Shown one piece after another: positions 17,607-64,000 of a stretch of 64,000 nt of DNA. The notes beneath the pieces were generated by a model, which had not been told where the DNA came from, did no database searches, and saw only the letters and a program-made list of their open reading frames with translations. Both the position numbers and the translations under genes were made by a program. Every line of letters begins with the position of its first letter. Position 1 is the stretch's first letter. This DNA comes from Octopus sinensis (lineage: Eukaryota). Where the stretch lies: positions 27,838,001 to 27,902,000 of the forward strand of contig NC_043003.1 of NCBI RefSeq assembly GCF_006345805.1, in the 5' to 3' direction.

Positions 17607-17946
17607 AAGATAATGCAATATTTTAATGGAATTAAATCAGACTGTTTCGGTTGCAGTCACACTACGCGGCATCATGGTTAACGGTCTTATTTTATAACTC
17701 CAAGCTGACCAATGCCTAGTGAGTGAATTTCATTGAAGGAAACTGTACGGAAGCCTGCCATGCACATACATATATACTTATACATACATACATAGACACA
17801 CACTCTTACAAACTCACGCACACACAAACACACACACACACACACATAAAATAGAAATATTAAATTTCTAAATATCTCAGAAATATAAGCGGTGGTGGTA
17901 CGATAGAGCAGTTGTATACTGTCAACTTAACTAGTACTATTGCTTT

Positions 17947-18745
17947 ATGTATGTATGTATGTATGTATGTATGTATGTATGTATGTATGTATGTATGTAT
18001 GCATGTATGTATGTATGCATGCATGTATGTATGTATGTATGTATGTATGTATGTATGTATGCATGTATGCATGCATGTATGCATGCATGTATGTATGTTT
18101 GCATGTATGTATGTATGTATGTATGTATGTATGTATGTATGCATGCATGTATGTATGTATGTATGTATGTATGTATGTATGTATGTATGTATGTATGTAT
18201 GCATGTATGCATGCATGTATGCATGCATGTATGTATGTATGCATGCATGTATGTATGTATGTATGTATGTATGTATGTATGTATGTATGTATGCATGTAT
18301 GCATGCATGTATGCATGCATGTATGTATGTTTGCATGTATGTATGTATGTATGCATGCATGTATGTATGTATGCATGCATGTATGTATGTTTGCATGTAT
18401 GTATGCATGTATGTATGTATGTATGTATGTATGTATGCATGCATGTATGTATGTATGTATGTATGTATGCATGCATGTATGCATGCATGTATGTATGTAT
18501 GTATGTATGCATGCATGTATGTATGTATGTATGCATGTATGTATGTATGTATGTATGTATGTATGTATGTATGCATGCATGTATGTATGTATGTATGTAT
18601 GTATGCATGCATGTATGCATGCATGTATGTATGCATGCATGCATGCATGTATGTATGCATGTATGTATGTATGTATGCATGTATGTATGTATGTATGTAT
18701 GTATGTATGCATGTATGTATGTATGCATGCATGTATGTATGTAAG
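17947..18745. repeat. About 800-bp (TATG/CATG)n tetranucleotide array
   Basis: Seen directly; source of the six long MYVC/HTYI ORFs. Confidence 0.95.
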
Positions 18746-18884
18746 TACGTACGTACGCACACTGAAGCTTGAAGCATAAAGCGATAGTAACAAATACAAG
18801 TATGTGTATACAAGCTACAAGTATTTCGGATATCATGGACAATAAAAATCTTCATGTCATGCTCAGGTATAATAAACAAAACTA

Positions 18885-27936: not shown

Positions 27937-29880
27937 CGTTTTTGGATTTGGTTTGCAAGATTCTTTATTTCAGTTCGTGTGTTGAAGCATATGCTGTTGT
28001 ATCTAGAGAGAGTCATTATCTTTTTGTGCCTTATAATGTAACACACGCACCTGTAAAATTTCCACTTATTTATTATTTTTATTTTCCTAAAATTTTCGTT
28101 GCATCTTGCAACCTTTTCAATAGTCTTGACTCTGTCCGTTAATTACTCTGCGTTCCTTTTTGTTTGTTTGTGCGCATGTGTGTGGGTCAGTGTGTGTGTG
28201 TGTGTGCCTATGCATGCAGGCATGTACTATGTATGTATGTATGTATGTAGTATGTATGTATGTATGTATGTATGTATATGTATGTATGTATGTATATTTG
28301 TGTATGTATGCATCTGTATGTATGTATCCTGCATATTCATGTGCTTGCATGTCCGTGCTTGTGTATTTTCTATGTATGTGTGTGTGTGAGCGTGTGTTTG
28401 TATATATATATATATATATTATATATATATATATATATAATATATATATATACCCCTTTCTCCTTGTGTGTGCATGTCTGTGTATGTGTGTGTTATACAA
28501 CTATGTACCATGTTTGTATGTATCGATGTGCATCTCTATACGTGTTTCCATATGTGCTCTTGTGTGGAGTAAAGTGTGTGTATATATGGTCATGTGTTTC
28601 AGTCTCCATTTGCGTATGTGTGCTTGTCTGTTCTTATAACCTATGTATCTATCCGTTTGTATGTTGATCAACATACAGACATATTTTAAGGACTCCACAT
28701 CACCACTCCACCATTTGGGCTATCAGGGCCTCAAGGCTGGAGTTCCTTGCAAGGGCAAGAAAATTCTATGACCCTAATTGTCGGGGTGGTGTGCATAGGT
28801 GTGTGCACGTACGTGTTTACGTATGTGTGTATGTATATGTGAGTGTTGGTTATGGTTGCTAGAATCGTATTGCAAGTTTATATATGTATGTGTTTTTTCT
28901 TGGAATGTGTGTGGGCTAGTGCTCTAGTGTGGGAATATTGTGTTTGTGCGCGTGTGTATATATATGTGTGTGTGTTTGCGTTGGAGGTTTGCATTGTATT
29001 TGTGTGTGTGTGCGTGATTTTGTACATCTGTATGTGTTTCTGTGTGTGTTTGTTTTGGGTGTGTACCTGGGGAGATATGTTAGAGTATGTTGAGTTGTAG
29101 TCTGTATTTTTGAATAAGATTATTTTCCCTATTTATTCGTGTTGGGTTGCGAGTACTTTCTTTAGACATGGGTCTTGACTCAGCTGTGGGATGTTCTTGT
29201 ATATAATTGTGTAAGCTTCTGAATTTATTGGATTGTGTGTTTAGAGATATGGGAAACTATTTAATGTATCGTGAGTGTGTCTCGGTTTTCGTAAGTCTTG
29301 GGTAGCAATTGTCTTGGCCCGTTCTATTTCATTGTCAAATGATGCTGGGTAATATCTTTCGGAGAAGAATTGACTTTAGTTCTTGCAGTCTTTTATTTCG
29401 TGTTCTTTAATTTCAGACAATTGTACATTCTTCTCGCTAGGTTGAATGGGGTATTTGTATTCGTGTGCGTTGGGTGCTTGGAGGTGAACAGAAGGTATTG
29501 TTTGGAATCAGTTGGCTTGTAGTGGATATCAGTTTCAATGTTGGTGCCCTTTTTTATTATAAGAAAGTGACGAATAGGAAGTTGGTCTTGACTATATTCC
29601 ATTATAAATTGGATATGGTTGTTGAAACTGTTGATTAAGTTTTTGAAATCAATGAGTTAGTCGAGTGTGTGGGATCATAGGATGAGGCAATCATCAAGTA
29701 GCGTTTCCAATTCTCCAACAGGTATTTGTGGAAAGACAGGCCGTATTTAGATTTGGATTCTTCATAAATTTGTAATTCTAGGTAGGCCATCACCAGGTTT
29801 GCATAAGTAGGGGCGACTTTAGTATCCATTGCAGTCCCTGATACTTATCTGTAGGTGTTATTATTTAAATTCAAAAATTG
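27937..29880 (-). mobile_element. Penelope-like element(s): degenerate RT, GIY-YIG tail and pLTR
   Basis: GTAMDTKVAPTYANLVM...WKRYL; TDIHYKPTDSKQYLLFTSKHP; ENNLIQKYRLQLNIL*. pLTR 27937-28670 is homologous to 42258-42920. Confidence 0.8.
28087..28123 (-). ncRNA. Candidate minimal type I hammerhead with U3-A8 variant core
   Basis: CUA UUGAAAA G GUUGC-AAGAU-GCAAC GAA AAUU U UAG; identical copy at 42411-42447. Confidence 0.5.
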
Positions 29881-29885
29881 TTATA

Positions 29886-31569
29886 TCATCTTCATCGTTT
29901 AACGTCTGCTTTCCATGCTAGCATGGGTTGGACGATTTGACTGAGGACTGGCGAACCAGATGGCTGCACCAGGCTCCAATCTTGATCTGGCAGAGTTTCA
30001 ACAGCTGGATGCCCTTTCTAATGCCAACCACTCCGGGAGTGTAGTGGGTGCTTTTACGTACCACCGGCACGAGTGTCAGTCAGGCGGTACTGGCAGCAGC
30101 CTCGCCCAAATGGTGTTATTTTTACGTCCCACCTGCACACCGACACAAGTGCCAGTAAGGTGACGCTGGTAACGATCATGCTCATATGGTGCTTTTTACG
30201 TGTCACCGGCACAGATGCCAGTCATCGAATTTGATTTTGATTTTACTTGCCTCACAGGTCTTCGCAAGCAGTGACCAATGAAAGGAAGGTATGCATAAGT
30301 GGGCTAGTTACACCCCTGGGATACACCAAACGTTTATGGTCTCATTTGGCTTGCTGGGTCTTCTCACTAGTCATTGCCTCAGTGAGGCCTAATGTTCGAA
30401 GGTCGTGCTTCACCACTTCATCCCAGGTCTTCCTGGGTCTACCTCTTCCACAGGTTCCCTCAACTACTAGGGTGTGGCACTTTTTCACACAGCTATCTTC
30501 ATCCATTCTCGCCACATGACCATATGAGCGCAGTCGTCTCTCTTGCACACTACATCTAATGCTTCTTAGGTCCAACTTTTCTCTCAAGGTACTTACATTC
30601 TGTTCAGTATGCACACTGACATTACACATCCATCGGATCATACTGGCTTCATTCCTTACGAGCTTACACATATCCTCAGCAGTCACGGCCCATGTTTCAC
30701 TGCCATCTAGCATGGCTGTTCGCAAACATGCGTCATACAGCCTACCTTTTACTCTGAGCGAGAGGCCTTTTGTCACCAGCAGAGGTAAGAGCTCTCTGAA
30801 CTTTGCCCAGGCTATTCTTATTCTAGCAGTTACACTTTCAGTGCACCCACCCCCACTACTGACTTGGTCACCTAGGTAATGGAAGCTATCAACTACTTCT
30901 AGTTTTTCTCCCTGGAATGTGACGGAAGCTGTTCTCTGCACATTTTCAGTGTTTATTGCTCCTGAGCATCTGCCACATACAAAAACTATCTTCCCAGTTA
31001 GCCTTCCTTTGATATTGCTGCACCTCTTATGTATCCATAGCTTACAATGGGTACATCTTATAGAGTTTTTACATATGCCTTTTCTACAGATCGAGCAGGG
31101 CCATCTACCTGAAGGGATTTGTGGTTTGCCTGCCTTTCTACTTATTAGGACTTTGGTTTTAGCTAGGTTGACTCTAAGGCCCTTCGATTCTAATCCTTGT
31201 TTCCACATCTGAAACTTCTCCTCTAGTTCTGATAGTGACTCAGCAATTAGAGCAAGGTCGTCAGTATAGAGGAGCTCCCAGGGGCATCCTGTCTTGAATT
31301 CCTCTGTTATTGCCTGGAGGACTATGATAAATAGGAGAGGGGCTAAGGACTGAACCTTGGTGCACTTCTACCTCCGCCCAGAAATCTTCACCGTACTCGT
31401 TGCCAACCCTCACCTTACTGACAGCGTCCCTGTACATGGCTTGCACAGCTCTCACTAACCATTCATCTATCCCTAATTTCCTCATTGACCACCAGATAAG
31501 GGATCGGGGGACCCTGTCAAAGGCTTTCTCCGTGTCAACAAAAGCCAAGTACAAAGGTTTAACTTGGCC

Positions 31570-31570
<1 letters not shown>
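29886..31570 (-). mobile_element. RTE-clade LINE, 3' part (RT C-terminus, Cys-rich region, 3' UTR)
   Basis: LAFVDTEKAFDRVP; HQGSVLS; YTDDLAL region; WKQGLESKGLRVNLAKTK; GRGRPRKTWDE. Frameshifted. Confidence 0.9.
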
Positions 31571-31626
<56 letters not shown>

Positions 31627-31649
31627 CATCATCATCATCATCATCATCA

Positions 31650-33645
31650 TCATCATTTAGCGTCCGTTCTTCATGCTAGCATGGGTTGGACGGTTCAACT
31701 GGGGTCTGTGAAGCTGGAAGGCTTCATCAGGCCCAGTCAGATCTGGCAGTGTTTCTACGGCTGGATGCCCTTCCTAACGCCAACCACTCCGTGAGTGTAG
31801 TGGGTGCTTTTTACGTGCCACCTGCACAGGTGCCAGACAGAGCTGGCAAACGGCCACGAACGGATGGTGCTTTTACGTGTCACCGGCACGGGGCCAGGCG
31901 AGGCTGGCAACGGACACGAACGGATGGTGCTTTTACGTGCCACCAACACGGGGGCCAGACAGAGCTGGCAAACGGCCACGAACGGATGGTGCTTTTACGT
32001 GTCACCGGCACGGGGCCAGGCGAGGCTGGCAACGGGCACGAACGGATGGTGCTTTTACATGCCACCGACATGGGGGCCAGACAGGGCTGGCAAACGGCCA
32101 CGAACGGATGGTGCTTTTACGTGTCACCGGCACGGGGACCAGGCGAGGCTGGCAACGGACACGAACGGATGGTGCTTTTACATGTCACCGACATGGGGGC
32201 CAGACAGGGCTGGCAAACGGCCACGAACGGATGGTGCTTTTACGTGTCACCAGCACGGGGGCCAGACAGAGCTGGCAAACGGCCACGAACGGATGGCTTT
32301 TACGTGTCACCGGCACGGGGGCCAGACAGAGCTGGCAAACGGCCACAAACGGATGGTACTTTTACGTGTCACTGGCACGGGGGCCAGGCCAGGCTGGCAA
32401 CGAACACGAACGGATGGTGCTTTACGTGCCACCTACACGGGGGCCAGACAGGGCTGGCGAACGGCTACGAACGGATGGTACTTTTACGTGTCACCTGCAC
32501 GGGGGCCCTGATGTTGATCGACCTCAATTTGGTTTGATCTTGATTTTGACTGTTCTCACTGGTCTTGCCGGGTTTTCTCACGCACAGCATACCTCCAAAG
32601 GTCTCGGTCACTGGTCATTTCCTTGGTGAGACCTAAAGTTCGAAGGTCGTGCTTCACCGCCTCGACCCAGGTTTTCCTGGGTCTACCTCTTCCACAGGTC
32701 CCCTCAACTGCCAGGGTGTGGCACTTTCGCACACAACAACTATCTTCAGCCATTCTCATCACATGACCATACCAGCACATACGTCTCTCTTGCACACAAC
32801 AACTGATACTTCTTAGGTTCAACTTTTCTCTCAAGGTACTTACACTCTGTCGATTATGAACACTGACGTTACACATCCATCGGAGCATACTAGCTTCATT
32901 TCTTGCGAGCTTACGCAAATCCTCAGCAGTCACAGCCCAAGTTTCACTACCATGTAGCATGCTGTACGTACACATGCATCATACAGTCTGCCTTTTACTT
33001 TGAGCGAGAGGCCTTTGTCACCAGCAGAGGTAAGAGCTCTCTAAACTTTGCCCAGGCCATTCTTACTCTAGCAGTTATACTCTCAGCGCACCCGCCCCCG
33101 CTACTGACTTGGTCACCTAGGTAACGGAAACTATCAACTACTTCTAGCTTTTCTCCTGGAAAGTGACGGAAGTTGGTCTCAGAGCATCTTCAGTGTTAAT
33201 TGTTCCTGAGCATCTGCCACATACAAAAACCATCTTCCTAGTTAGCCTTCCTTGACATTGCTGCACCTCTTATGTGTCCATAGCTTACACTTGGTGCATC
33301 TTATAGAGTTTCTACCTACACCTTTTCTACAGATCGAGCAGGGCCATCTACCTGAAGGCGTTTGTGATTGGTCTACCTTCCTACTTATTAGGACTTTGGT
33401 TTTGGCTAGGTTGATTTTAAGGCCCTTCGATTCTAAACCTTGTTTCCATACCTGAAACTTCTCCTCTAGTTCTGATAGAGACTCAGCAATTAGAGCAAGG
33501 TCATCAGCATAGAGGAGCTCCCGGGGCATCCTGTCTTGAATTCCTCCGTTATTGCCTGGAGGACTATGATAAATAGGAGGGGACTGAGGACTGAACTGAA
33601 CCTTGGTGGACCCCAACCTCTACCCTGAATTCTTCACTGTACTCG

Positions 33646-33723: not shown

Positions 33724-33813
<90 letters not shown>

Positions 33814-33814
<1 letters not shown>

Positions 33815-33971
33815 TTTATTTTAAGCAGCAGAAAATTCAACAAAATCTGTTACTCTGAGTTTCTCGTTGCCGTTCATCAGACAGTTTTTGCTAGAAAAAA
33901 CTGTCTGATGAACGGTAACGAGAAACTCAGAGTAACAGATTTTGTTGAATTTTCTGCTGCTTAAAATAAAG
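33814..33971. repeat. Fold-back (~76-bp arms) of a Penelope pLTR tail
   Basis: ctttattttaagcagcagaaaattc...acagttttt gctag aaaaaactgt...gaattttctgctgcttaaaataaag; about one substitution between arms. Confidence 0.9.
33901..33938 (+). ncRNA. Minimal type I hammerhead ribozyme (mirror copy on the minus strand at 33847-33884)
   Basis: CUGU CUGAUGA A CG-GUAA-CG A GAA ACUC-A-GAGU A ACAG: stem I CUGU/ACAG, near-palindromic stem III, GUA cleavage triplet. Confidence 0.65.
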
Positions 33972-34040
33972 CATATTACTCTACCACTGGTATTTGAGTA
34001 CTCTTTTTTCCACCTTGTTTCACATTTATGTGTTTACTCC

Positions 34041-34127: not shown

Positions 34128-34430
34128 AGGCGCAATGGCCCAGTGGTTAGGGCAGCGGACTCGCAGTCGTAGGATCGCGGTTTCGATTCCCAGACCGGGC
34201 GTTGTGTGTGTTTCTTGAGCGAAAATACCTAAAAGCTCCACGAGGCTCCGGCAGTGGGTGGTGATCCCTGCTGTACTCTTTCATCACTCTTTCTCTCTTT
34301 CTTCTGTTGGCCTGCTCGATTAGCCAGCGGGGTGGCGTCGTTCGAAGGCTAAAATAATGCGAACGCATTGTGACCAGCGATGTGTAGCAACATCTGATGG
34401 TCTGGTCGGTCACGTGATCACGTGATATAT
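34126..34430 (+). mobile_element. tRNA-derived SINE (family D)
   Basis: A-box-like tggcccagtggtt and B-box-like ggtttcgattccc. Relatives near 51040-51190, 57845-57960 and 60360-60480. Confidence 0.8.
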
Positions 34431-34719: not shown

Positions 34720-35262
34720 TCATCCGATGACAGGCACCCATGCCAACCTCCCTTCATTGGACACTAAACTCTGCTTGCGAAGACCTGTTGGGGCAAGTGA
34801 AATCGGAATCGAAATTGAACCAATCCTATGACTGGCACCCGGCAGTTGCCAGGTCCGCTGGACTGACTCCTGTGCAGGTGGCAAGTGAAGAACCACCATT
34901 TCGACCCTGTGCTTGAGGAAATCCATTGAGTCAAGTACACCAACATCAAAATCAATGGAGACTGCAGTTGTGATGCCTGTGCCGGTGGCACATAAAAAGC
35001 ACCATCTAAACGTGGCCGATGCCAGCGCCGCCTCGACTGGCTTCCGTGCCGGTGGCACGTAAAATGCACCAATCCGATCGTGGCCATTACCAGCCTCGCC
35101 TGGCACTTGTGCCGGTGGCACGTAAAAAGCACCCACTACACTCACGGAGTGGTTGTCATTAGGAAGGGCATCCAGTTGTAGAAACACTGCCAGATCAGAC
35201 TGTGCCTGGTGCAGCCTTCTGGCTTCCCAGATCCCCGGTCGAACTGTCCAACCCATGCTAGC
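34720..35262 (+). mobile_element. RTE 3'-UTR-derived repeat
   Basis: Family C in the opposite orientation. Confidence 0.75.
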
Positions 35263-35270
35263 AGAGTAAA

Positions 35271-36026
35271 TTTATTTTATAGAAGGAGCTTCTACAGGAC
35301 TAGAACTGTTTCATTCAAATGAAATCGTCAGGAAGCTTGCTGTCAAAATGAGTTCAGGTATTTATACATTTAGGCAGATTTAATGGGGTGGTGGTGGGGG
35401 ACGTTTTTTGGGTAAGCAGGGCACAAACTGTCGTTCTTAGGGGAGTGGTCAAAAGAATCAGTGATAAAGTAAATAAATGAATAAATAGAATAATTGAATA
35501 GAGTTTTAGGTAAATTAGAAGACTATTGCTTTTAGTCAGTTTGTTGTTGTTGTTATTAAGTGGAGGGAAGAAGTAGATAAATATACATGAAAGAACATAT
35601 AAAATGAATATACATACAAACCCACATATGTATATGTATATGTATATGTATGGATATTCGCATGTGTATGTATGTGGGTTTGTATGTATATTTATTTTGT
35701 ATGTTCTTTCATGTATATTTATCTACTTCTTCCCTCCACTTAATAACAACAACAACAAACTGACTAAAAGCAATAGTCTTCTAACTTACCTAAAACTCTA
35801 TTCAATTATTCTATTTATTCATTTATTTACTTTATCACTGATTCTTTTGACCACTCCCCTAAGAACGACAGTTTGTGCCCTGCTTACCCAAAAAACGTCC
35901 CCCACCACCACCCCATTAAATCTGCCTAAATGTATAAATACCAGAACTCATTTTGACAGCAAGCTTCCTGATGATTTCATTTGAATGAAACAGTTCTAGT
36001 CCTGTAGAAGCTCCTTCTATAAAATA

Positions 36027-36030
<4 letters not shown>
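35271..36030. repeat. 760-bp fold-back (~350-bp near-identical arms), Penelope pLTR-derived
   Basis: 35271 to about 35628 is the reverse complement of about 35678-36030; each arm ends in a hammerhead. Confidence 0.9.
35962..36012 (+). ncRNA. Type I hammerhead ribozyme (mirror copy on the minus strand at 35287-35337)
   Basis: AGCUUC CUGAUGA U UUC-AUUU-GAA U GAA ACAG-uucuaguc-CUGU A GAAGCU: 6-bp stem I, 4-bp stem III, GUA site. The minus copy has core CUGACGA. Confidence 0.75.
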
Positions 36031-36058
<28 letters not shown>

Positions 36059-36075
36059 AATATATATATTTATAT

Positions 36076-36106
<31 letters not shown>

Positions 36107-36198
36107 CACACACACATACACATACACATTCATGTGTTTGTTGTTTGTTAGAGCCTCGTTGTGACAAAACCCATGTGCTCATTTTTCTCTCATTCAAC

Positions 36199-36246
36199 AT
36201 GGCAGATGTTAACATTGATTCTCTGAAGATTTGTGCTCAACAGGCG
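36199..36246 (+). CDS. RARS1: RARS1 coding exon 1 (MADVNIDSLKICAQQA)
   Basis: caacATGG start context and phase-0 donor GCG|gtaaat. Joins in frame to exon 2 to give QQA-ENEI, compared with human LQQ-EEEI. Confidence 0.7.
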
Positions 36247-37879
36247 GTAAATAACAACAGTTTTCTCCTTTAATTCAGTCATCTTAGTCATTCATATATT
36301 TATCTACCTATTTTAAAGCATCATCATTTACTTTATGTATCTTTCTAAAACAAATATATCCCCTTTCCATTAATGATTAGTTTTACTTATACAACCTTAT
36401 CGTTTCGTTTACAAATTTAATTCCGCATCTTAGAATGTTTCTTTTAACTTTGTTTATAATCGTTTACTTGTGTTGTTATAAGAAAATAAATATTAATGCA
36501 AAATCATTGTTAAAATATAATAAGGAAGCAATTGAAATATATTTACGAATTATTTATTCATATGGACATAATTAAAACGTTTGGCGATATTTACCTTCAG
36601 TTTTGAACCTTTATTCTATTTCCTACATGTATGTCGAAACGAAACGAAACGAAATATCGTAGACTTTTTTTTTTGCATCCTTTTTGTTTTTCGCCGGTTC
36701 TGTTGACACGTTCTTCGCAGAGATTTTCTGGTTTTCGTGTAAGAATAGAAGTAATCTTTTCTGACAGATATAGGATCTTATATTTTTGCAGAACGATAAG
36801 AGTGATTTAAATCATTGGAGAGTAGAATAAAAAAAAAATATGCTTCGCTGTATTTAGTTAACCACCAATTTACTTTCCGGGTTCAAATCCTGCCAAGGCG
36901 AACTTGCAAAATCGTAATATTTGATGTTTTAAAATAGAAATCCGAATATATATATATATATATAAAAAATTCGCAAAATTTTGCTTTTCATTCTTCTTGG
37001 TATTGGAAGTGATTTATTTTTGTGATGCATCCTAGATACGAATAGAAGATGATTAAACTCCAGTGTTATCGTATTCTTCCTTGTAGTTATACTACTTTCA
37101 GAACACGTTCATGCTTTTCATCTTTTCGAGACCGATAAAATAAGTAGCAGTAGAGCACTGGAGTCGATGTAATTAACTAAACATCTACCGTAAATTTGCT
37201 GGCTTTTTGCCAAAATTCGCATCAAATATATGTATATAAAACAAGGATCTATATACCATAGGTTTATTTAATATCCACTAAGTAAATTTTCTTGTTGAGC
37301 CCTGAGTCACTCGTAATTCAGCTGTCCTATAACCAAAGTCGTTCCTGCTCTGATCATTTCATTTTCTTGTGTTTCTTGAACCACCTTACAGTGCTTAATA
37401 TGTTTCCTTTTATAAGTGAATAGGGTGTAAGTTGAGGAAGATTTGACTGTTATTTCTTGGAGCGTGATCGGCTGCATAGGGGATTCTTCTTAAGTTAATA
37501 ATAAATTCTATCACCTTTTATAAGGTCCAAATGCTGCCTTTCTTTAACGTCTATGTGTAAACATTATCGCACATATGTTATACAGAAGGGTGTCTTTTAT
37601 AACAAACTGACATAACTACAGATGTATCTCCCCTAACTTTGTTTCCTCATAACTTCCAGAAAAATGGATACTTTTTAACGAACGTTTCAACAAATAATTA
37701 CTTAGATCTTGTTGACTGAATGTATGTAAAGATTTGCTGGAAAAAATTGATTCCGGGTGTTTGAGGAGAGGAGTTTCGGACAATTCACACGACCTGACAT
37801 TTTCCCCCTCATAACTTTCAGGAAAATGGGTATTTTTTAATGAAATTTTATGCAAATACCTTTCAAACGGTGTAGATTA

Positions 37880-40729: not shown

Positions 40730-42130
40730 TGTTATATATTTTGAGTGTTTTTGTCACTAGCGATCTCAAGATATAACTTTGTATTTTGTAGGAAATTCCT
40801 ACGGGACAGCTTGCTGAGTGCCACAGACCAAGTCTGTGGATGGTGCAAAGTCCCTTCCAGACCTAGAGTTATGTGGTGGTGGAATAGTGCAGTAGACAAA
40901 GCCATTAGTGCAAAGAAACAGGCCTGGAAAGCCTGGAGGGATGGGGGTAGCAGGGAACTGTACCAGGTAGCCAAAAGGGAGGCTGGGCGGCAGGTATACA
41001 TAGCCAAAGATGTAGCAGAAAAGAAGAAGTTTGCCAATGTCCAGCAACGTGAGGACCAAAGAACTGAGGTATTTCGGATTGCTAGACTGTGTGTGAGAGA
41101 AAATAGTGATGTTACAGGAGAGAAATGAGGCCCGCATGGATGATGGGGCACTTGCTTTTAATGTTGGTGAAAAGAAAGAGGCTTGGAGAAGCCATTATGA
41201 AAGACTGCTGAATGTGGAGAATGAATGGGAGGAGGAGAGCCTGCCAAATGTTGACCCAGTAGAGGGACCAGCTATCCGAATAGACAGCTCCCTTGTAGTT
41301 AAGGCAATTAAGGGTATGAAACCAGGTAAAGCCCCCGGCCCATCAAGAATCACTGCTGAGATGCTTAAAACAGCTGGTTATGTGGGCTATGGTCTAGTCA
41401 CCCGCATTGTAAACCAGGTAGTTCATAATGGAGTCATACCCAATGACTGGCGTAACAGCACCATAGTCAACTGCTACAAGGGTAAGGGTGATGATCTAGA
41501 TAGAAATAATTACAGGGGTATTAAACTGTTGGATCAGGTGATGAAGGTCACAGAGAGGGTCATAACCCATCTCATTAGGGAGAGAACTTGCTTAGATGAG
41601 ATGCAGTTCGGTTTTGTGCCAGGTAGAAGCACCACTGATGCTATATTCCTGATCCGACAACTGCAGGAGAAGTACCTAGCTAAAGATAAACCCCTCTACA
41701 TAGCTTTTGTGGATTTGGAGAAAGCCTTTGACAGGGTCCCCCGATCCCTTATCTGGTGGTCGATGCGGAAACTGGAGATTGACGAATGGCTAATAAGGGC
41801 TGTACAGGCCCTATACAGAGAGGCTGTCAGCAAGGTTAGGATTGGCAACGAATATAGTGAAGAATTCCGGGTAGAAGTAGGTGTACACCAAGGCTCAGCC
41901 CTCTGTCTCCTTTTATTCATCATAGTCCTCCAGGCAATAACAGAGGAATTCAAAACAGGTTGCTCCTGGGAGCTCCTCTATGCTGATGACCTGGCTCTCA
42001 TAGCAGAATCACTACCAGAACTAGAAAAGAAATTTCCGGTGTGGAAGCAAGGGTTAGAATCAAAGGGCCTTAGAGTAAATGTAGCAAAGACCAAAATTAT
42101 AGTAAGCAGAAAGGCGAACTCAGCACCCCC
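40730..42130 (+). mobile_element. RTE-clade LINE fragment (linker and RT)
   Basis: ORF 41106-42194: KAPGPS, NYRGIKLL, QFGFVPGRSTTD, DLEKAFDRVP, HQGS, YADDL. Confidence 0.92.
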
Positions 42131-42257
42131 CCCCCCCTCTATATATATAGGTGGTACTATTGAGTTAGTCATGACCTGGGCTGATGATGGCTGAAACCAA
42201 TCTAAGTTATATATAGCTCCTACCTTTTTGGTGATAAGGGCCTATATATATATATAT

Positions 42258-53331: not shown

Positions 53332-53481
53332 GAAAATGAAATCAACAAAATTGAAACTGAAATTGCAGCGTTGAAGAAGGGAGAGGTCATTGCAGGTGGA
53401 AGCATGGCATTACCACCAGAAGTAGAAGCACTTCAGTCAGAAAATGTTAAACTCCAGTACCAACTTGACCATTTGAAAAGT
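53332..53481 (+). CDS. RARS1: RARS1 coding exon 2 (N-terminal coiled-coil extension)
   Basis: acag|GAAAATGAA...AAAAGT|gtgagt; 150 nt; ENEINKIETEIAALKKG...LQSENVKLQYQLDHLKS. Confidence 0.92.
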
Positions 53482-53741: not shown

Positions 53742-54903
53742 TTAACGTCCGTTTTCCATGCTAGCATGGGTTGGATGGTTCAACTGGGGTCAGGGAAGCC
53801 AGAAGACTGCACCAGGCCCAGTCTGATCTGGCAGTGTTTCTACAGCTGGATGCCCTTCCTAACGCCAACTACTCCGTGAGTGTAGTGGGTACTTTTTATG
53901 TGCCACCTGCACAGGTACCAGACGAGGCTGGCAAACGGCCACGATTGGATGGTGCTTTTTATGTGCCACCGGCACGGGGGCCAGTCGAGGCTGGCAACGG
54001 CCACAATCGGATGGTGCTTTTTACGTGCCACCGGCACGGAGGCCTGTTTATTGATTCGGGTTGGATGAGTGTAACCCCACCCTCTTCATTGCTTTCTGGC
54101 TCCACTTGATCTCCCTCACTCTCTCCTAAAATGTGATTAGTTATGTAGCTCCTCTACAGCATGAAGCTTGTTCTGCTCTGGTCTCTTTTCTCATACGTTT
54201 AACCTATCTTTTGCCCATCATCTCCTAGCATGAAGTTCTCCCACTTGGGAAACTGCACGACAACCTCACTAGTGCTGGTGGTACAGAAAATGCACACAGT
54301 ACATGTCATAAATTGGTTAGTGTCAGGAAAAGCATCCAGCTGTAGAAATATACCAAATCAGACACTGGAATATGATGCAGTCCTTGAGCTCATCAGATCC
54401 TGTCAAATCATCTAACCCATGCCAGCCTGAATATGGATATTAAATAATAATGATGATGATGGTGGTGGCGCCGCCGCTGCTGCTGCTGCTGCATTCTAGA
54501 CTACATTAACCCATATGTTCTTCAATTTTCTTAAGACAATTGCTTGTAGGTATAAGGAAATTTGGCTGTTATTTCTAGCAGTTTGATAGACCACATTCAA
54601 GCTTCTTTGTTGGTTTGGGGGCATTTTATTTTTATTTTTATTTAGTCAGGCAAACTGAAGTAATCAAAGTTGGATGCCTTGGTCAAGAGCATAAATAAGA
54701 CACTGAGATTCTGAGAAAGCCTGCAAATATCAGAGATGCTGTCTTTCAGACGAAAGACATAAAAAAAAGGACGAAAAACAGCAAAACCACAAAAGATTTG
54801 AACTTTAGGCTTCATGATCAGTAATCCAGCACCTTATCCACATAGCTAATTGTACTGATTTTGCATATCTTTAATTTCTCTGCCTCTCTCTCTTTTTGTT
54901 CAG

Positions 54904-55095
54904 AGTTTTGCCAAGGAGCAGATGAAAGAAAGTAACCACATGATATGTCTAAATGTTCTCATGGAGCAGATCTTTGCCCTTGCTATTCAAGATGCTTATC
55001 CTGATCTGGGTTCTGAAGCCCCTGTCATGCTCACTCCTACCAATAAACCCAACTTTGGCGATTACCAATGCAACAGTGCCATGAGTATTTGCCAG
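54904..55095 (+). CDS. RARS1: RARS1 coding exon 3
   Basis: cag|AGTTTT...TGCCAG|gtaagt; 192 nt; ...AIQDAYPDL...FGDYQCNSAMSICQ. Confidence 0.97.
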
Positions 55096-55685
55096 GTAAG
55101 TACCCAGTGTTACTTTTTTTAAACCCTTTAGCATTCGATTTACTGTCAACTGTAATACTTACTTATTCGCATTGTTTTGAATTAATCATGCATTATCTCA
55201 TAGCTTTGAGATTTTGGTGATATGATTATATACATACACTGGTGTAGGTATGGCTGTGTGGTAAGAAGCTTGCTTCCCAACCACATGGTTCTGAGTTCAG
55301 TCCCACTATGTTGTACCTTAGACAAGTTTCTTCTGCTATAGCCTCGAGCTAACCAAAGCCTTGTGGGTGGAATTGGTAGACAGAACTGAAAGACGTCTAT
55401 TGAACACGCACACACACGCATGCACGCATATAACGTGAGTTCATGGCTGTTTCCTGCACCAGTTTTGCATAGCCGCCCCAGCCCATCCAAAGTACCTTGG
55501 ATTGCAGAACGACCTGCTGTGCTTATACGACGGGCTTCTTTCAGTTTCCGTCTACCAAATCCACTCACAAGGCTTTGGTCGGCCCGAGGCTATAGTAGAA
55601 GACACTTGCCCAAGGTACCACGCAGTGGGACTGAACCCGGAACCATGTGGTTGGTAAGCAAGCTACTTACCACACAGCCACTCCT

Positions 55686-57113: not shown

Positions 57114-57708
57114 TATATGCATAGGCACAAGCATGACTGTGTGGTAAGAAGCTTGCTGCCTTACCACATGGTTCCAGGTTCAGTCCCACTGCATGGCACC
57201 TTGGGCAACTGTCTTCTACTAGAACCACAGGCTGACCAAAGCCTTGTGAGTAGGTTTATTAGACGGAAACTGAAAGAAGCCCATTATATGTGTGCGTGTG
57301 TATATGTATGTACATATCTGCATGTGTGTGTACCTTTGTGTCTGTATTTGACCTCACCCCACCACTGCTTGACAACTAGTGTTGGTGTGTTTATGTCCTT
57401 GTAACTTAGCAGTTCAGCTTAAGAGATCGATAAAATAAGTACTAGGCTTACAAAGAATAAATCAGTTTGTTCGACCAAAACCATTCAAGGCACTGCTCCA
57501 GCCTGGCTGTAATCAAGTAAAAGAATAAAAGAATATATATATGGCAGTGACTAGAACAAGGTTTGAAATTGTGATGTTGTGGTTCTCTAATCCAATATCA
57601 GAACCTTTTGGTGACCACCTCTATCCACGTCTTAGCATTCTAGCTTTATATATATTTTATTGCAAAACTCTCAATCAGTAATATTCTTGTTACATTTTCT
57701 GCTTTCAG

Positions 57709-57798
57709 CTGCTGAAGAGTAAAGGTGTAAAAGTTAATCCAAGGGAAGTGGCCCAAAATATCTTGAACCATCTCCAGAAAACAGAATATATCGAAAAG
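57709..57798 (+). CDS. RARS1: RARS1 coding exon 4
   Basis: ttcag|CTGCTG...GAAAAG|gtcagt; 90 nt; LLKSKGVKVNPREVAQNILNHLQKTEYIEK. Confidence 0.95.
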
Positions 57799-58020
57799 GT
57801 CAGTTTATATCAAATATGGGCATTGAAAATTACAACAGTGGAGGTTGTTGGTATATGGCGTAGTGGTTAAGAGTGCAGGCATATGGCATAGTGGTTAAGA
57901 GCGTGGGCTACAAACCCCAAGATTCTGAGATTGATTCCAGGCAGTGACCTGAATAATAATAATTTTAACAGCATTGAAAAATACCTTAGGAACGAGAACC
58001 CAGGTTCGAAATTTCCCCAA

Positions 58021-59817: not shown

Positions 59818-59996
59818 ACGGACATAGCTGGCCCAGGATTCATCAACATCTTTTTGGCTAAGAATTATGTATCAAAGCAGATCAGCAAACTTTTAAAGAA
59901 TGGAGTCCAGCCGCCTTACATTGCCAAAAAGTGTAATGTTGTCATTGACTTCTCATCTCCAAATATTGCCAAGGAAATGCATGTTGGACATCTCAG
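59818..59996 (+). CDS. RARS1: RARS1 coding exon 5 (class I HIGH motif)
   Basis: ttag|ACGGAC...CTCAG|gtaagt; 179 nt; IAGPGFINI...[19 protein letters not shown]. Confidence 0.97.
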
Positions 59997-60480
59997 GTAA
60001 GTTTATTATTGTTTTTAGTCATGTTTGTTTGTTTGTCTGTCTGTGGGCAAGATATCGCAAGAACCACTGGATGGATTTGCATAAAACTTTCAGGGATGTT
60101 TGGCCTCATGACTGGCATGAACTGATTATATTTTGAGATTTTGGGATTGATCCGGTACCAGACAAAGATTCTGGATTATATTTCCTGCTTTTTCACTTAA
60201 TTTTTGAGAGCGATCAGGTTATTTTTTAGTATTCTTGTTTGTGAGAGCAGTCGAGTTTATTTCAGATTTTTTTCATTTTTAAGATCATCTCTGGCTAATC
60301 GTTGCCTTGGTGGAGGTTTGCGCTCTCTGAGTGCTCTTATTATTATTGTTGTTATAATTAGGACGCATAGCCTAGTGGTTAAGGTTTTGCACTCAGATCA
60401 TGAGATCATGGTTTCAATTCCTGGACCAGGTGATGCACGGTGTTCTTGAGTAAACACTTCATCTCATTGCTCTGCAATTA

Positions 60481-63824: not shown

Positions 63825-64000
<176 letters not shown>

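What the first reader, a model, noticed from the sequence alone, without database searches (positions are those of the whole stretch)
35271..36030. 760-bp fold-back with a well-formed hammerhead about 190 nt upstream of the RARS1 start codon
Seen: ~350-bp near-identical arms. The sense-strand hammerhead has an intact core, 6-bp stem I and a true 4-bp looped stem III (predicted cut after A36006), so it may not need dimerisation; its stem II base is irregular. It ends about 170 bp before the ATG of an essential gene. Inference: a recent Penelope insertion at a promoter that could form a cruciform, cut read-through transcripts in either direction as an insulator or terminator, or influence the RARS1 5' end.
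Basis: partly seen in the sequence, partly recalled or inferred. Interest (0 to 1): 0.7.

Follow-up and report, generated by a model that had tools for sequence, protein, structure and literature searches.

The report
Young retroelement fold-back beside octopus RARS1
A 760-bp hairpin-shaped piece of mobile DNA, with a weak hammerhead-ribozyme-like motif at each outer end, sits in a TA-repeat about 170 bp upstream of the octopus arginyl-tRNA synthetase gene. It looks like an ordinary Penelope-type insertion, not a regulatory device.

Summary
The fold-back is real. Its arms are 35267-35628 and 35671-36032 (362 nt, 6 substitutions, no indels), with a 42-nt spacer. Each arm ends, facing outward, in a motif with a complete hammerhead core, a 6-bp stem I and a 4-bp stem III. 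The + copy would cut after A36006, 193 nt before the RARS1 ATG at 36199, which is confirmed as the annotated start.

The motif is not "well-formed". Stem II is 3 bp over a U.U mismatch. A competing hairpin pairs the catalytic GAA. Rfam's hammerhead models give no hit, yet they do detect a neighbouring octopus hammerhead. In a read-through transcript the 362-bp duplex would bury the motif.

The window is Octopus sinensis. The orthologous O. vulgaris site lacks the fold-back and instead holds a different tandem/inverted element with a hammerhead, in the same (TA)n. The flanking SINE has lost its tail only here, so the fold-back is the derived state.

Best reading: a non-coding, 5'-truncated, head-to-head insertion made by Penelope-like-element machinery. 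This is a known architecture, and the insertion is probably neutral. I found no other copies and no parent element, so family membership is inferred. It is a new member of a known kind, of low interest.

The parts
34976..35263 (+). 3' part of a SINE copy that forms the left flank. It is cut right after ...CATGCTAGCA and lacks the family's tail ATGGAGAACGGACGTTAAACGATGATGA.
   Evidence: At least 19 other copies in the window and in L001 keep the tail, as does the O. vulgaris orthologue.
35264..35269 (.). Junction hexamer GAGTAA between the truncated SINE and the fold-back. It may be filler or a remnant.
   Evidence: Identity to O. vulgaris stops at 35263.
35270..35628 (-). Left arm. The element's sense strand is the - strand, with its 3' end at 35270.
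35287..35337 (-). Hammerhead-core motif of the left arm (CUGACGA ... GAAA ... UA).
35629..35670 (.). 42-nt non-palindromic, (TGTATA)n-like spacer where the two 5'-truncated ends meet.
35671..36029 (+). Right arm. The sense strand is the + strand, with its 3' end at 36029.
35962..36012 (+). Hammerhead-core motif of the right arm. The predicted cut is between A36006 and G36007.
36020..36029 (+). 3'-terminal TAAAATAAAT (AATAAA-like), mirrored at 35270-35279. The second fold-back has the same terminus.
36030..36117 (.). Remainder of the (TA)n/(CA)n microsatellite that was the target.
36118..36198 (+). Proximal upstream block of RARS1. It is identical in O. vulgaris and contains Inr-like TCATTT/TCATTC.
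   Evidence: The Inr reading is inference.
36199..36246 (+). RARS1 coding exon 1 (MADVNIDSLKICAQQA, GT donor). Exon 2 is at 53332-53481.
33809..33976 (.). Second, older fold-back with the same layout: 84-nt arms, no spacer, and two outward hammerhead-core motifs at 33901-33938 (+) and 33884-33847 (-).
   Evidence: It is present in O. vulgaris.

Best explanation
The fold-back is a dead-on-arrival, non-coding insertion made by Penelope-like-element (PLE) reverse-transcription machinery in the Octopus sinensis lineage.

Proposed mechanism (inferred): the PLE endonuclease cut both strands in or near the AT-rich microsatellite upstream of RARS1. Each freed DNA end primed copying of the 3' end of an RNA that carried a hammerhead-core motif and ended in ...UAAAAUAAAU. 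That RNA came either from a PLE 3' region or from a non-autonomous, retrozyme-like derivative. The two cDNAs, about 362 and about 404 nt long, ran toward each other and were joined in a TGTATA-rich stretch. The result is two 5'-truncated copies head to head, with their 3' ends and hammerhead motifs facing outward. About 27 nt or more of target DNA (the SINE tail) was lost in the process.

Consequence (inferred): the hammerhead-like motif is a relic of the element's own biology. It is weak or inactive here and does nothing for RARS1. The insertion is probably neutral. Its only likely side effects are those of any long palindrome: instability, or a dsRNA hairpin if it is transcribed through.

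Shown: the structure, the motif, absence in O. vulgaris, the derived state, the target context, and the lack of any ORF.
Inferred: the PLE machinery, priming from both DNA ends, and neutrality.
For: 1. Head-to-head arms with the motif 17 nt from each outer end, sense strand outward.
2. Published PLE features match. Craig et al. 2021 report 5' truncation, an inverted 5'-truncated copy adjacent, HHR near the 3' end, and (TA)n targets that obscure target-site duplications (PMC8557442). Frangieh et al. 2024 show that a PLE protein cleaves and extends both DNA strands at AT-rich DNA (PMC11167929).
3. A complete hammerhead core with stems I and III is expected 0.010 times per shuffled window. Loop 3 has a central CUAG palindrome, a trait of PLE hammerheads.
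4. Two neighbours share the same logic. The second fold-back (33809-33976) has the same order of parts and the same TAAAATAAA terminus. The O. vulgaris orthologous site carries an independent insertion of tandem 536-bp units plus an inverted copy. Its hammerhead hits Rfam RF00163 at 27.4 bits, E 2.7e-5.
5. The fold-back is absent in O. vulgaris, and the SINE tail is missing only here. A target deletion fits retro-insertion or break repair, not cut-and-paste transposition.
6. Penelope families are recently active in Octopus (PMC13282606).
7. The arms have no ORF with any homologue.
Against: - There is no RT/GIY-YIG ORF in the window or in the O. vulgaris locus, and no direct tandem repeat (pLTR).
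- No second copy of the arm was found in 134 kb of Octopus DNA. No family, parent element or covariation could therefore be shown.
- The motif lacks the G10.1-C11.1 pair that PLE hammerheads conserve. It gets no hammerhead hit in Rfam even on an 86-nt slice.
- Its fold is no more stable than shuffled sequences (z -0.57). The hammerhead register of stem II has a pair probability of 0.015 or less.
- TA dinucleotides flank the palindrome, so a TA target-site duplication cannot be excluded.
- The arms differ more (6/362) than expected if they were identical at birth and younger than the species split: 2.8 differences expected, P = 0.066.
Confidence: 0.6

Rival explanations
1. A fold-back or MITE-type DNA transposon (terminal inverted repeats making up almost the whole element) that inserted at a TA. 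The hammerhead-like motif is then a chance match.
For: - The element is almost a pure palindrome.
- TA lies at 35267-35268 and at 36031-36032, which could be a TA duplication.
- The motif fails Rfam and is thermodynamically weak.
- Some chance motifs of this grade are expected genome-wide.
Against: - Loss of the SINE tail at the left junction does not fit cut-and-paste insertion.
- The motif sits at the right place and in the right orientation in both this fold-back and the second one.
- A true hammerhead element used the same microsatellite in the sister species.
- No other copies were found in 134 kb.
- In a (TA)n, TA flanks are expected anyway.
Confidence: 0.18
2. A DNA-level inverted duplication of a single inserted fragment. 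Possible routes are snap-back synthesis, replication template switching, or filler DNA captured during double-strand-break repair. Two separate reverse-transcription events are not required.
For: - The outer ends are exactly symmetric, and a short spacer lies in a low-complexity stretch.
- A target deletion is typical of break repair.
Against: - Snap-back copying gives arms that are identical at birth. The arms differ at 6/362 sites against 0.78% between the species.
- The same head-to-head layout recurs in the second fold-back and in the O. vulgaris element. This points to a systematic insertion mechanism.
Confidence: 0.12
3. A host-relevant element. Candidates are a ribozyme insulator or terminator, an outward-firing promoter from pLTR-like arms, or a hairpin-RNA (siRNA or ADAR substrate) locus that affects RARS1.
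For: - It lies 166 nt from the start codon of an essential gene.
- As RNA it would be a perfect 362-bp duplex.
Against: - It is lineage-specific. The sister species has a different insertion there, and the sequence downstream is identical in both.
- The hammerhead fold is predicted not to form in context.
- No expression data are available.
Confidence: 0.06
4. An assembly artefact of the long-read O. sinensis assembly.
For: Complex PLE insertions are known to cause assembly problems.
Against: - Both flanks are unique and collinear with an independent assembly of the sister species.
- The arms differ by substitutions only, and the spacer is not adapter-like.
Confidence: 0.03

Closest known systems
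Complex tandem/inverted insertions of Penelope-like elements (Penelope/Poseidon, Neptune and others; Craig et al. 2021, PMC8557442)
   Same: 5'-truncated copies, an inverted copy abutting at the 5' ends, a hammerhead motif near the 3' end, insertion into (TA)n, and no clear target-site duplication.
   Different: No RT/GIY-YIG ORF, no direct pLTR, and both copies are short (362 nt). The parent family is unidentified.
Minimal and type I hammerheads of PLEs and metazoan repeats (Cervera & de la Pena 2014, PMC4209133; Rfam RF00163)
   Same: CUGANGA...GAAA...UH core, a 6-bp helix I left open (type I), and a partly palindromic loop 3.
   Different: Helix II is 3 bp over a U.U where G10.1-C11.1 is normally conserved. 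Helix III is 4 bp with an 8-nt loop, instead of 1-2 bp. There is no Rfam hit, and activity is untested.
Non-LTR retrozymes (Cervera & de la Pena 2020, PMC7229834; Li et al. 2026 preprint, 10.64898/2026.07.22.740005)
   Same: Short, non-coding, hammerhead-bearing elements thought to be mobilised by PLEs. The O. vulgaris element at the same site fits this class.
   Different: Retrozymes are direct tandem repeats. This element is an inverted pair with no tandem unit.
Twin priming of LINE-1 (named from general knowledge)
   Same: Both DNA ends of a staggered break prime reverse transcription, and the products are joined internally.
   Different: L1 twin priming gives an inversion within a single copy, not two copies of the same 3' end.
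Foldback elements, palindromic MITEs and hairpin-RNA loci
   Same: Long inverted arms with a short spacer. The RNA would be a long hairpin.
   Different: A target deletion is present instead of a clear target-site duplication. No family copies were seen, and there is no evidence of small RNAs.

Membership tests
Penelope-like element insertion | ORF with PLE-type RT and GIY-YIG endonuclease | tested here: not met
   No ORF with homologues lies in the arms. No GIY-YIG or YxDD motif appears in any frame of the window or L001. At best this is a truncated or non-autonomous copy.
Penelope-like element insertion | 5'-truncated copies with an adjacent inverted 5'-truncated copy | tested here: met
   Head-to-head 362-nt arms with outward 3' ends. 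The feature is described.
Penelope-like element insertion | Direct partial tandem (pseudo-LTR) | tested here: not met
   No direct repeat of the arm was found.
Penelope-like element insertion | Hammerhead motif near the 3' end | tested here: inconclusive
   A core-complete motif lies 17 nt from each 3' end, but it is atypical and Rfam does not detect it.
Penelope-like element insertion | AT-rich or (TA)n target | tested here: met
   The right junction is in the (TA)n. The sister species has the (TA)n intact there.
Penelope-like element insertion | Sequence homology to a known PLE family or pLTR | not testable with these tools
   No repeat library or Octopus genome was searchable. There are no copies in 134 kb, and the DNA scans found nothing.
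Hammerhead ribozyme, type I | Conserved core C3-A9, G12-A14, A15.1-U16.1 and H17 | tested here: met
   All are present in both arms. The arms differ only at N7.
Hammerhead ribozyme, type I | Helix II closed by G10.1-C11.1 | tested here: not met
   U.U mismatch, then U-A, U-A and C-G. The hairpin alone has +0.5 kcal/mol, and its pair probability is 0.015 or less.
Hammerhead ribozyme, type I | Match to the Rfam covariance models | tested here: not met
   No hammerhead hit at the gathering score or at E<=10, even on an 86-nt slice. The control hammerhead in L001 scores 27.4 bits.
Hammerhead ribozyme, type I | Covariation across family members | not testable with these tools
   Only the two arms are available.
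Hammerhead ribozyme, type I | Self-cleavage | not testable with these tools
   Needs an in vitro assay.
Non-LTR retrozyme | Direct tandem units, each with a hammerhead | tested here: not met
   The arrangement is inverted, not tandem. The O. vulgaris element at the same site does meet this feature.
MITE or foldback DNA transposon | Terminal inverted repeats flanked by a target-site duplication | tested here: inconclusive
   TA flanks are possible but uninformative inside a (TA)n. The left junction shows a target deletion.
microRNA or hairpin-RNA gene | Match to a curated family at its threshold | tested here: not met
   Only sub-threshold miRNA-model hits, driven by the palindrome.

The most novel reading that the evidence does not exclude
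The junction of SINE tail and (TA)n just upstream of the RARS1 core promoter is a recurrent landing pad for hammerhead-bearing, PLE-mobilised elements. Two sister octopus species carry independent, different insertions there. The O. sinensis fold-back is not inert. Its outward-facing arms would act as a promoter or give a 362-bp dsRNA hairpin, an siRNA or ADAR substrate in a heavily RNA-editing animal, that changes the RARS1 5' end or its expression. Alternatively its U.U-based hammerhead is an active monomeric variant.
Probability: 0.06. Interest if true: 0.55.

Novelty: new member of a known kind. Interest (0 to 1): 0.22.

Why it matters
This is mainly a clean, dated example of how Penelope-type machinery builds head-to-head insertions. 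Priming from both cut DNA ends was shown in vitro only in 2024 (PMC11167929). It is also an example of an AT-microsatellite being hit independently in two sister species right next to an essential housekeeping gene without disturbing the downstream sequence. It does not bear on a long-standing question. Its value is as an annotation: the locus should be labelled as a TE-derived palindrome, not as a ribozyme or regulatory element. It also serves as a caution that core-complete hammerhead-like motifs in TE relics need not fold.

Tried and rejected
- Rfam at the gathering score and at E<=10 over 1 kb gave only palindrome-driven miRNA-model noise. I first took the lack of hits in a 3-kb scan of L001 to mean that Rfam misses all PLE hammerheads. 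Slice scans corrected this: the O. vulgaris hammerhead is detected, and the fold-back's motif is not.\n- More copies of the arm were sought five ways, all without result. These were blastn and nhmmer against the window and L001, exact-pattern scans of metagenome and viral contigs, and the arm ORF against 1.84 billion representative proteins, which gave one low-complexity hit. Exact look-ups of the two ORFs that overlap the fold-back found nothing on record.\n- An outgroup locus could not be fetched. The O. bimaculoides and O. sinensis RARS1 gene ranges are too long to return DNA, and other gene models are not on record.\n- The last protein search used a LINE RT from the window, hoping to sample more Octopus loci. 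It returned only relatives of 50-63% identity from unnamed ENA assemblies, so I dropped it.\n- The first RARS search returned only short proteins. A padded query was needed to reach the Octopus orthologues.\n- The N-terminal extension of the O. vulgaris gene model comes from an upstream exon with no counterpart in the window. I rejected it as evidence for an upstream TSS.\n- Reading the 100% identity of the 80 nt before the ATG as promoter constraint was dropped, because the identical stretch runs for 547 nt.

Full report
**1. What is in the sequence**

The repeat finder gives one dominant inverted repeat in the region. Its arms are 35267-35628 and 35671-36032, 362 nt each and 98% complementary, with 42 nt between them. 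A base-by-base comparison finds six substitutions and no indels. The spacer is TGTATATGTATATGTATATGTATGGATATTCGCATGTGTATG.

It finds a mirror copy on the - strand at 35337-35287. The descriptor required CUGANGA, helix II, GAAA, helix III, UH, and helix I closing the junction.

The + strand motif reads AGCUUC-CUGAUGA-U-UUC-AUUU-GAA-U-GAAA-CAG-UUCUAGUC-CUG-UA-GAAGCU, so the predicted cut follows A36006. The two copies differ only at core position 7, which is free to vary.

In 300 dinucleotide-preserving shuffles of the window, a motif of this grade (helix I at least 6 bp, II at least 3, III at least 4) appears 0.010 times per window. That is unusual for one window. A 2-3 Gb genome would still hold some hundreds by chance, so the motif alone proves nothing.

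**2. How good is the hammerhead?**

- The core is complete, but helix II is only U-A, U-A, C-G on top of a U.U mismatch. PLE and canonical hammerheads conserve G10.1-C11.1 at that place (PMC4209133).
- That hairpin alone has a free energy of +0.5 kcal/mol. A shifted hairpin, UUUCAU/AUGAAA (-1.5 kcal/mol), pairs the catalytic G12-A13-A14.
- For the isolated 51-mer, the hammerhead fold is 2.1 kcal/mol above the minimum free energy. The hammerhead register of helix II has a pair probability of 0.015, against 0.66 for the competitor.
- The fold is no more stable than shuffled sequences (z = -0.57).
- With 20 nt or more of native flank, helices I and III also vanish from the ensemble.
- The whole fold-back as RNA is a -635 kcal/mol perfect hairpin in which none of the hammerhead helices form.
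- Rfam gives no hammerhead hit at the gathering score, at E<=10 over 1 kb, or on an 86-nt slice.
- As a control, the hammerhead of a neighbouring octopus element hits Hammerhead_1 (RF00163) over the full model on a 106-nt slice. It scores 27.4 bits, E 2.7e-5, against a gathering score of 34.

The motif is therefore core-complete but atypical, not 'well-formed'. Nearest-neighbour folding ignores tertiary contacts, so activity still needs a bench test.

**3. The gene next door and the organism**

- RARS1 exons lie at 54886-55098, 57706-57807, 59821-59997 and 63873-63998. I found them by tblastn with a human sequence recalled from memory, used only as a lead.
- Exon 2 is 53332-53481, with acceptor acag| and donor |gtgagt.
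- The ORF starting at ATG 36199 (MADVNIDSLKICAQQA, then a GT donor) joins exon 2 in phase.
- A 667-aa NCBI model from assembly GCA_006345805.1 begins MADVNIDSLKICAQQAENEINK... and matches the window's exons exactly. From my own knowledge this assembly is Octopus sinensis.
- A more distant cephalopod RARS begins MAAVDVTSLKASAQQAENEISK....

The start codon is therefore confirmed. The fold-back ends 166 nt before it, and the predicted cut site lies 193 nt before it. The TSS is unknown.

The O. vulgaris model adds 25 residues from a far-upstream exon that has no counterpart in the window. I regard that extension as unreliable.

**4. Comparison with the sister species**

The O. vulgaris locus (L001 = GCA_951406725.2, OX597820.1:34186298-34257062) is collinear with the window from 31539 onward. 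Substitutions amount to 0.78% over 29,303 aligned sites. Window 31539-35263 matches L001 18037-21731, and window 36025-40294 matches L001 23104-27357.

The fold-back lies exactly between these blocks and has no match in L001.

O. vulgaris has, in order:
- the intact tail of the flanking SINE;
- a (TA)n;
- a different 1.26-kb insertion;
- more (TA)n.

That insertion consists of two tandem 536-bp units on the - strand plus a 213-nt inverted copy, again head to head. Each unit carries the Rfam-detectable hammerhead CUGACGA-GCUA...UAGC-GAAA-CAAUUG-UC.

Polarity can be set without an outgroup. At least 19 other copies of the SINE in the two loci continue ...CATGCTAGC-ATGGARAACGGACGTTAAAYGATGATGA. 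Only the copy abutting the fold-back stops after GCTAGCA. The fold-back state is therefore derived, and it came with a target deletion of 27 nt or more.

Downstream of the microsatellite the two species are identical for 547 nt (36118-36664).

**5. A second fold-back of the same design**

At 33809-33976 there is a 168-bp palindrome with 84-nt arms and no spacer. It carries two outward hammerhead-core motifs (CUGAUGA-A-CGGUAACG-A-GAAA-CUCAGAG-UA) and the same terminal TAAAATAAA. It lies at the edge of another (TA)n. It is present in O. vulgaris, so it is older.

It shares no other sequence with the first fold-back, and it too gets no Rfam hammerhead hit.

**6. Interpretation**

The features are:
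- two copies of one 3' end, 5'-truncated and joined head to head;
- a hammerhead-core motif close to each 3' end;
- an AT-microsatellite target;
- no clear target-site duplication;
- a target deletion;
- no coding capacity.

This is the published signature of PLE insertions (PMC8557442). It also fits the in vitro finding that a PLE protein cleaves and extends both strands of an AT-rich target (PMC11167929). In that study hammerhead cleavage was dispensable for insertion.

Non-LTR retrozymes are now argued to be non-autonomous derivatives of PLE pLTRs (10.64898/2026.07.22.740005). About 30 Penelope families are recently active in O. vulgaris (PMC13282606).

I therefore read the fold-back as a dead-on-arrival insertion primed from both DNA ends by PLE machinery (confidence 0.6). 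It copied either a PLE 3' end or a non-autonomous relative.

The weak points are:
- no parent element, no RT/EN ORF and no other copy in 134 kb;
- an atypical hammerhead;
- TA flanks that leave a TA-duplicating DNA transposon possible;
- arms that differ at 6/362 sites where 2.8 or fewer differences are expected if they were identical at birth and younger than the species split (P = 0.066).

That last point mildly favours two non-identical RNA templates or an insertion about as old as the split. It counts against a self-templated snap-back.

**7. Function**

Nothing points to a host function.
- The insertion is lineage-specific.
- The sister species tolerates a different and larger insertion at the same point, with identical downstream sequence.
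- The ribozyme fold is predicted not to form in any read-through transcript.
- PLE hammerheads are poor cleavers even when canonical, or need the element's own protein.

What remains possible is generic to any long palindrome: instability or cruciform formation, or a long dsRNA hairpin if the locus is transcribed. Outward transcription from the arms is also conceivable. I give these about 6% together.

**8. Verdict**

The regulatory and ribozyme-function ideas are not supported.

This is a new member of a known kind, of low interest (0.22). The one mildly notable point is the independent capture of two different hammerhead-bearing elements by the same microsatellite upstream of RARS1 in sister species.

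Noticed in passing
window 33809-33976 (L001 20290-20457): A second, older fold-back: 84-nt arms, no spacer, two outward hammerhead-core motifs and the same TAAAATAAA terminus. It sits at the edge of a (TA)n and is conserved in O. vulgaris.
   Followed up: partly
L001 21857-23120 (O. vulgaris site orthologous to window 35264-36029): An independent insertion in the same microsatellite: two tandem 536-bp units plus a 213-nt inverted copy. Each unit has a type I hammerhead that hits Rfam RF00163 (27.4 bits, E 2.7e-5). It is retrozyme-like.
   Followed up: partly
window 31803-32507 and 34976-35263; tails at e.g. 38939, 45940, 50860: An abundant SINE-like family (at least 11 copies in the window). 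It has an internal 62-nt tandem array and a tail ATGGAGAACGGACGTTAAACGATGATGA. A tRNA-like head at about 34128-34200 is not called by ARAGORN.
   Followed up: partly
window 30342-33616 (-) and 41106-42194 (+): LINE reverse-transcriptase fragments (YADDLAL) followed by a PHD-type zinc finger. The closest database relatives are only 50-63% identical and come from unnamed ENA assemblies.
   Followed up: partly
window 1-31538 versus L001 1-18036: Collinearity with O. vulgaris is lost upstream of window 31539, where only repeats match. Large insertions, deletions or a rearrangement separate the two species upstream of RARS1.
   Followed up: no
L001 10001-10028; window about 36150: The O. vulgaris RARS model CAI9725457.1 has a 25-aa N-terminal extension. 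It comes from an upstream exon that has no counterpart in the window, spliced to an acceptor-like ttgtttgttag|AG 48 nt before the true ATG. It is probably a prediction artefact, but the acceptor-like site exists in both species.
   Followed up: partly
window 36118-36664: 547 nt spanning the RARS1 proximal upstream block, exon 1 and the start of intron 1 are identical in O. sinensis and O. vulgaris, against 0.78% substitutions locus-wide. Inr-like TCATTT/TCATTC lie 6-25 nt before the ATG.
   Followed up: partly
window 17860-18879, 6225-8008, 28100-28700: Long compound (CATA/TGTA/CA)n microsatellites give spurious ORFs of 130-340 aa in all frames. Any ORF-based scan of this genome will be swamped by them.
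   Followed up: no
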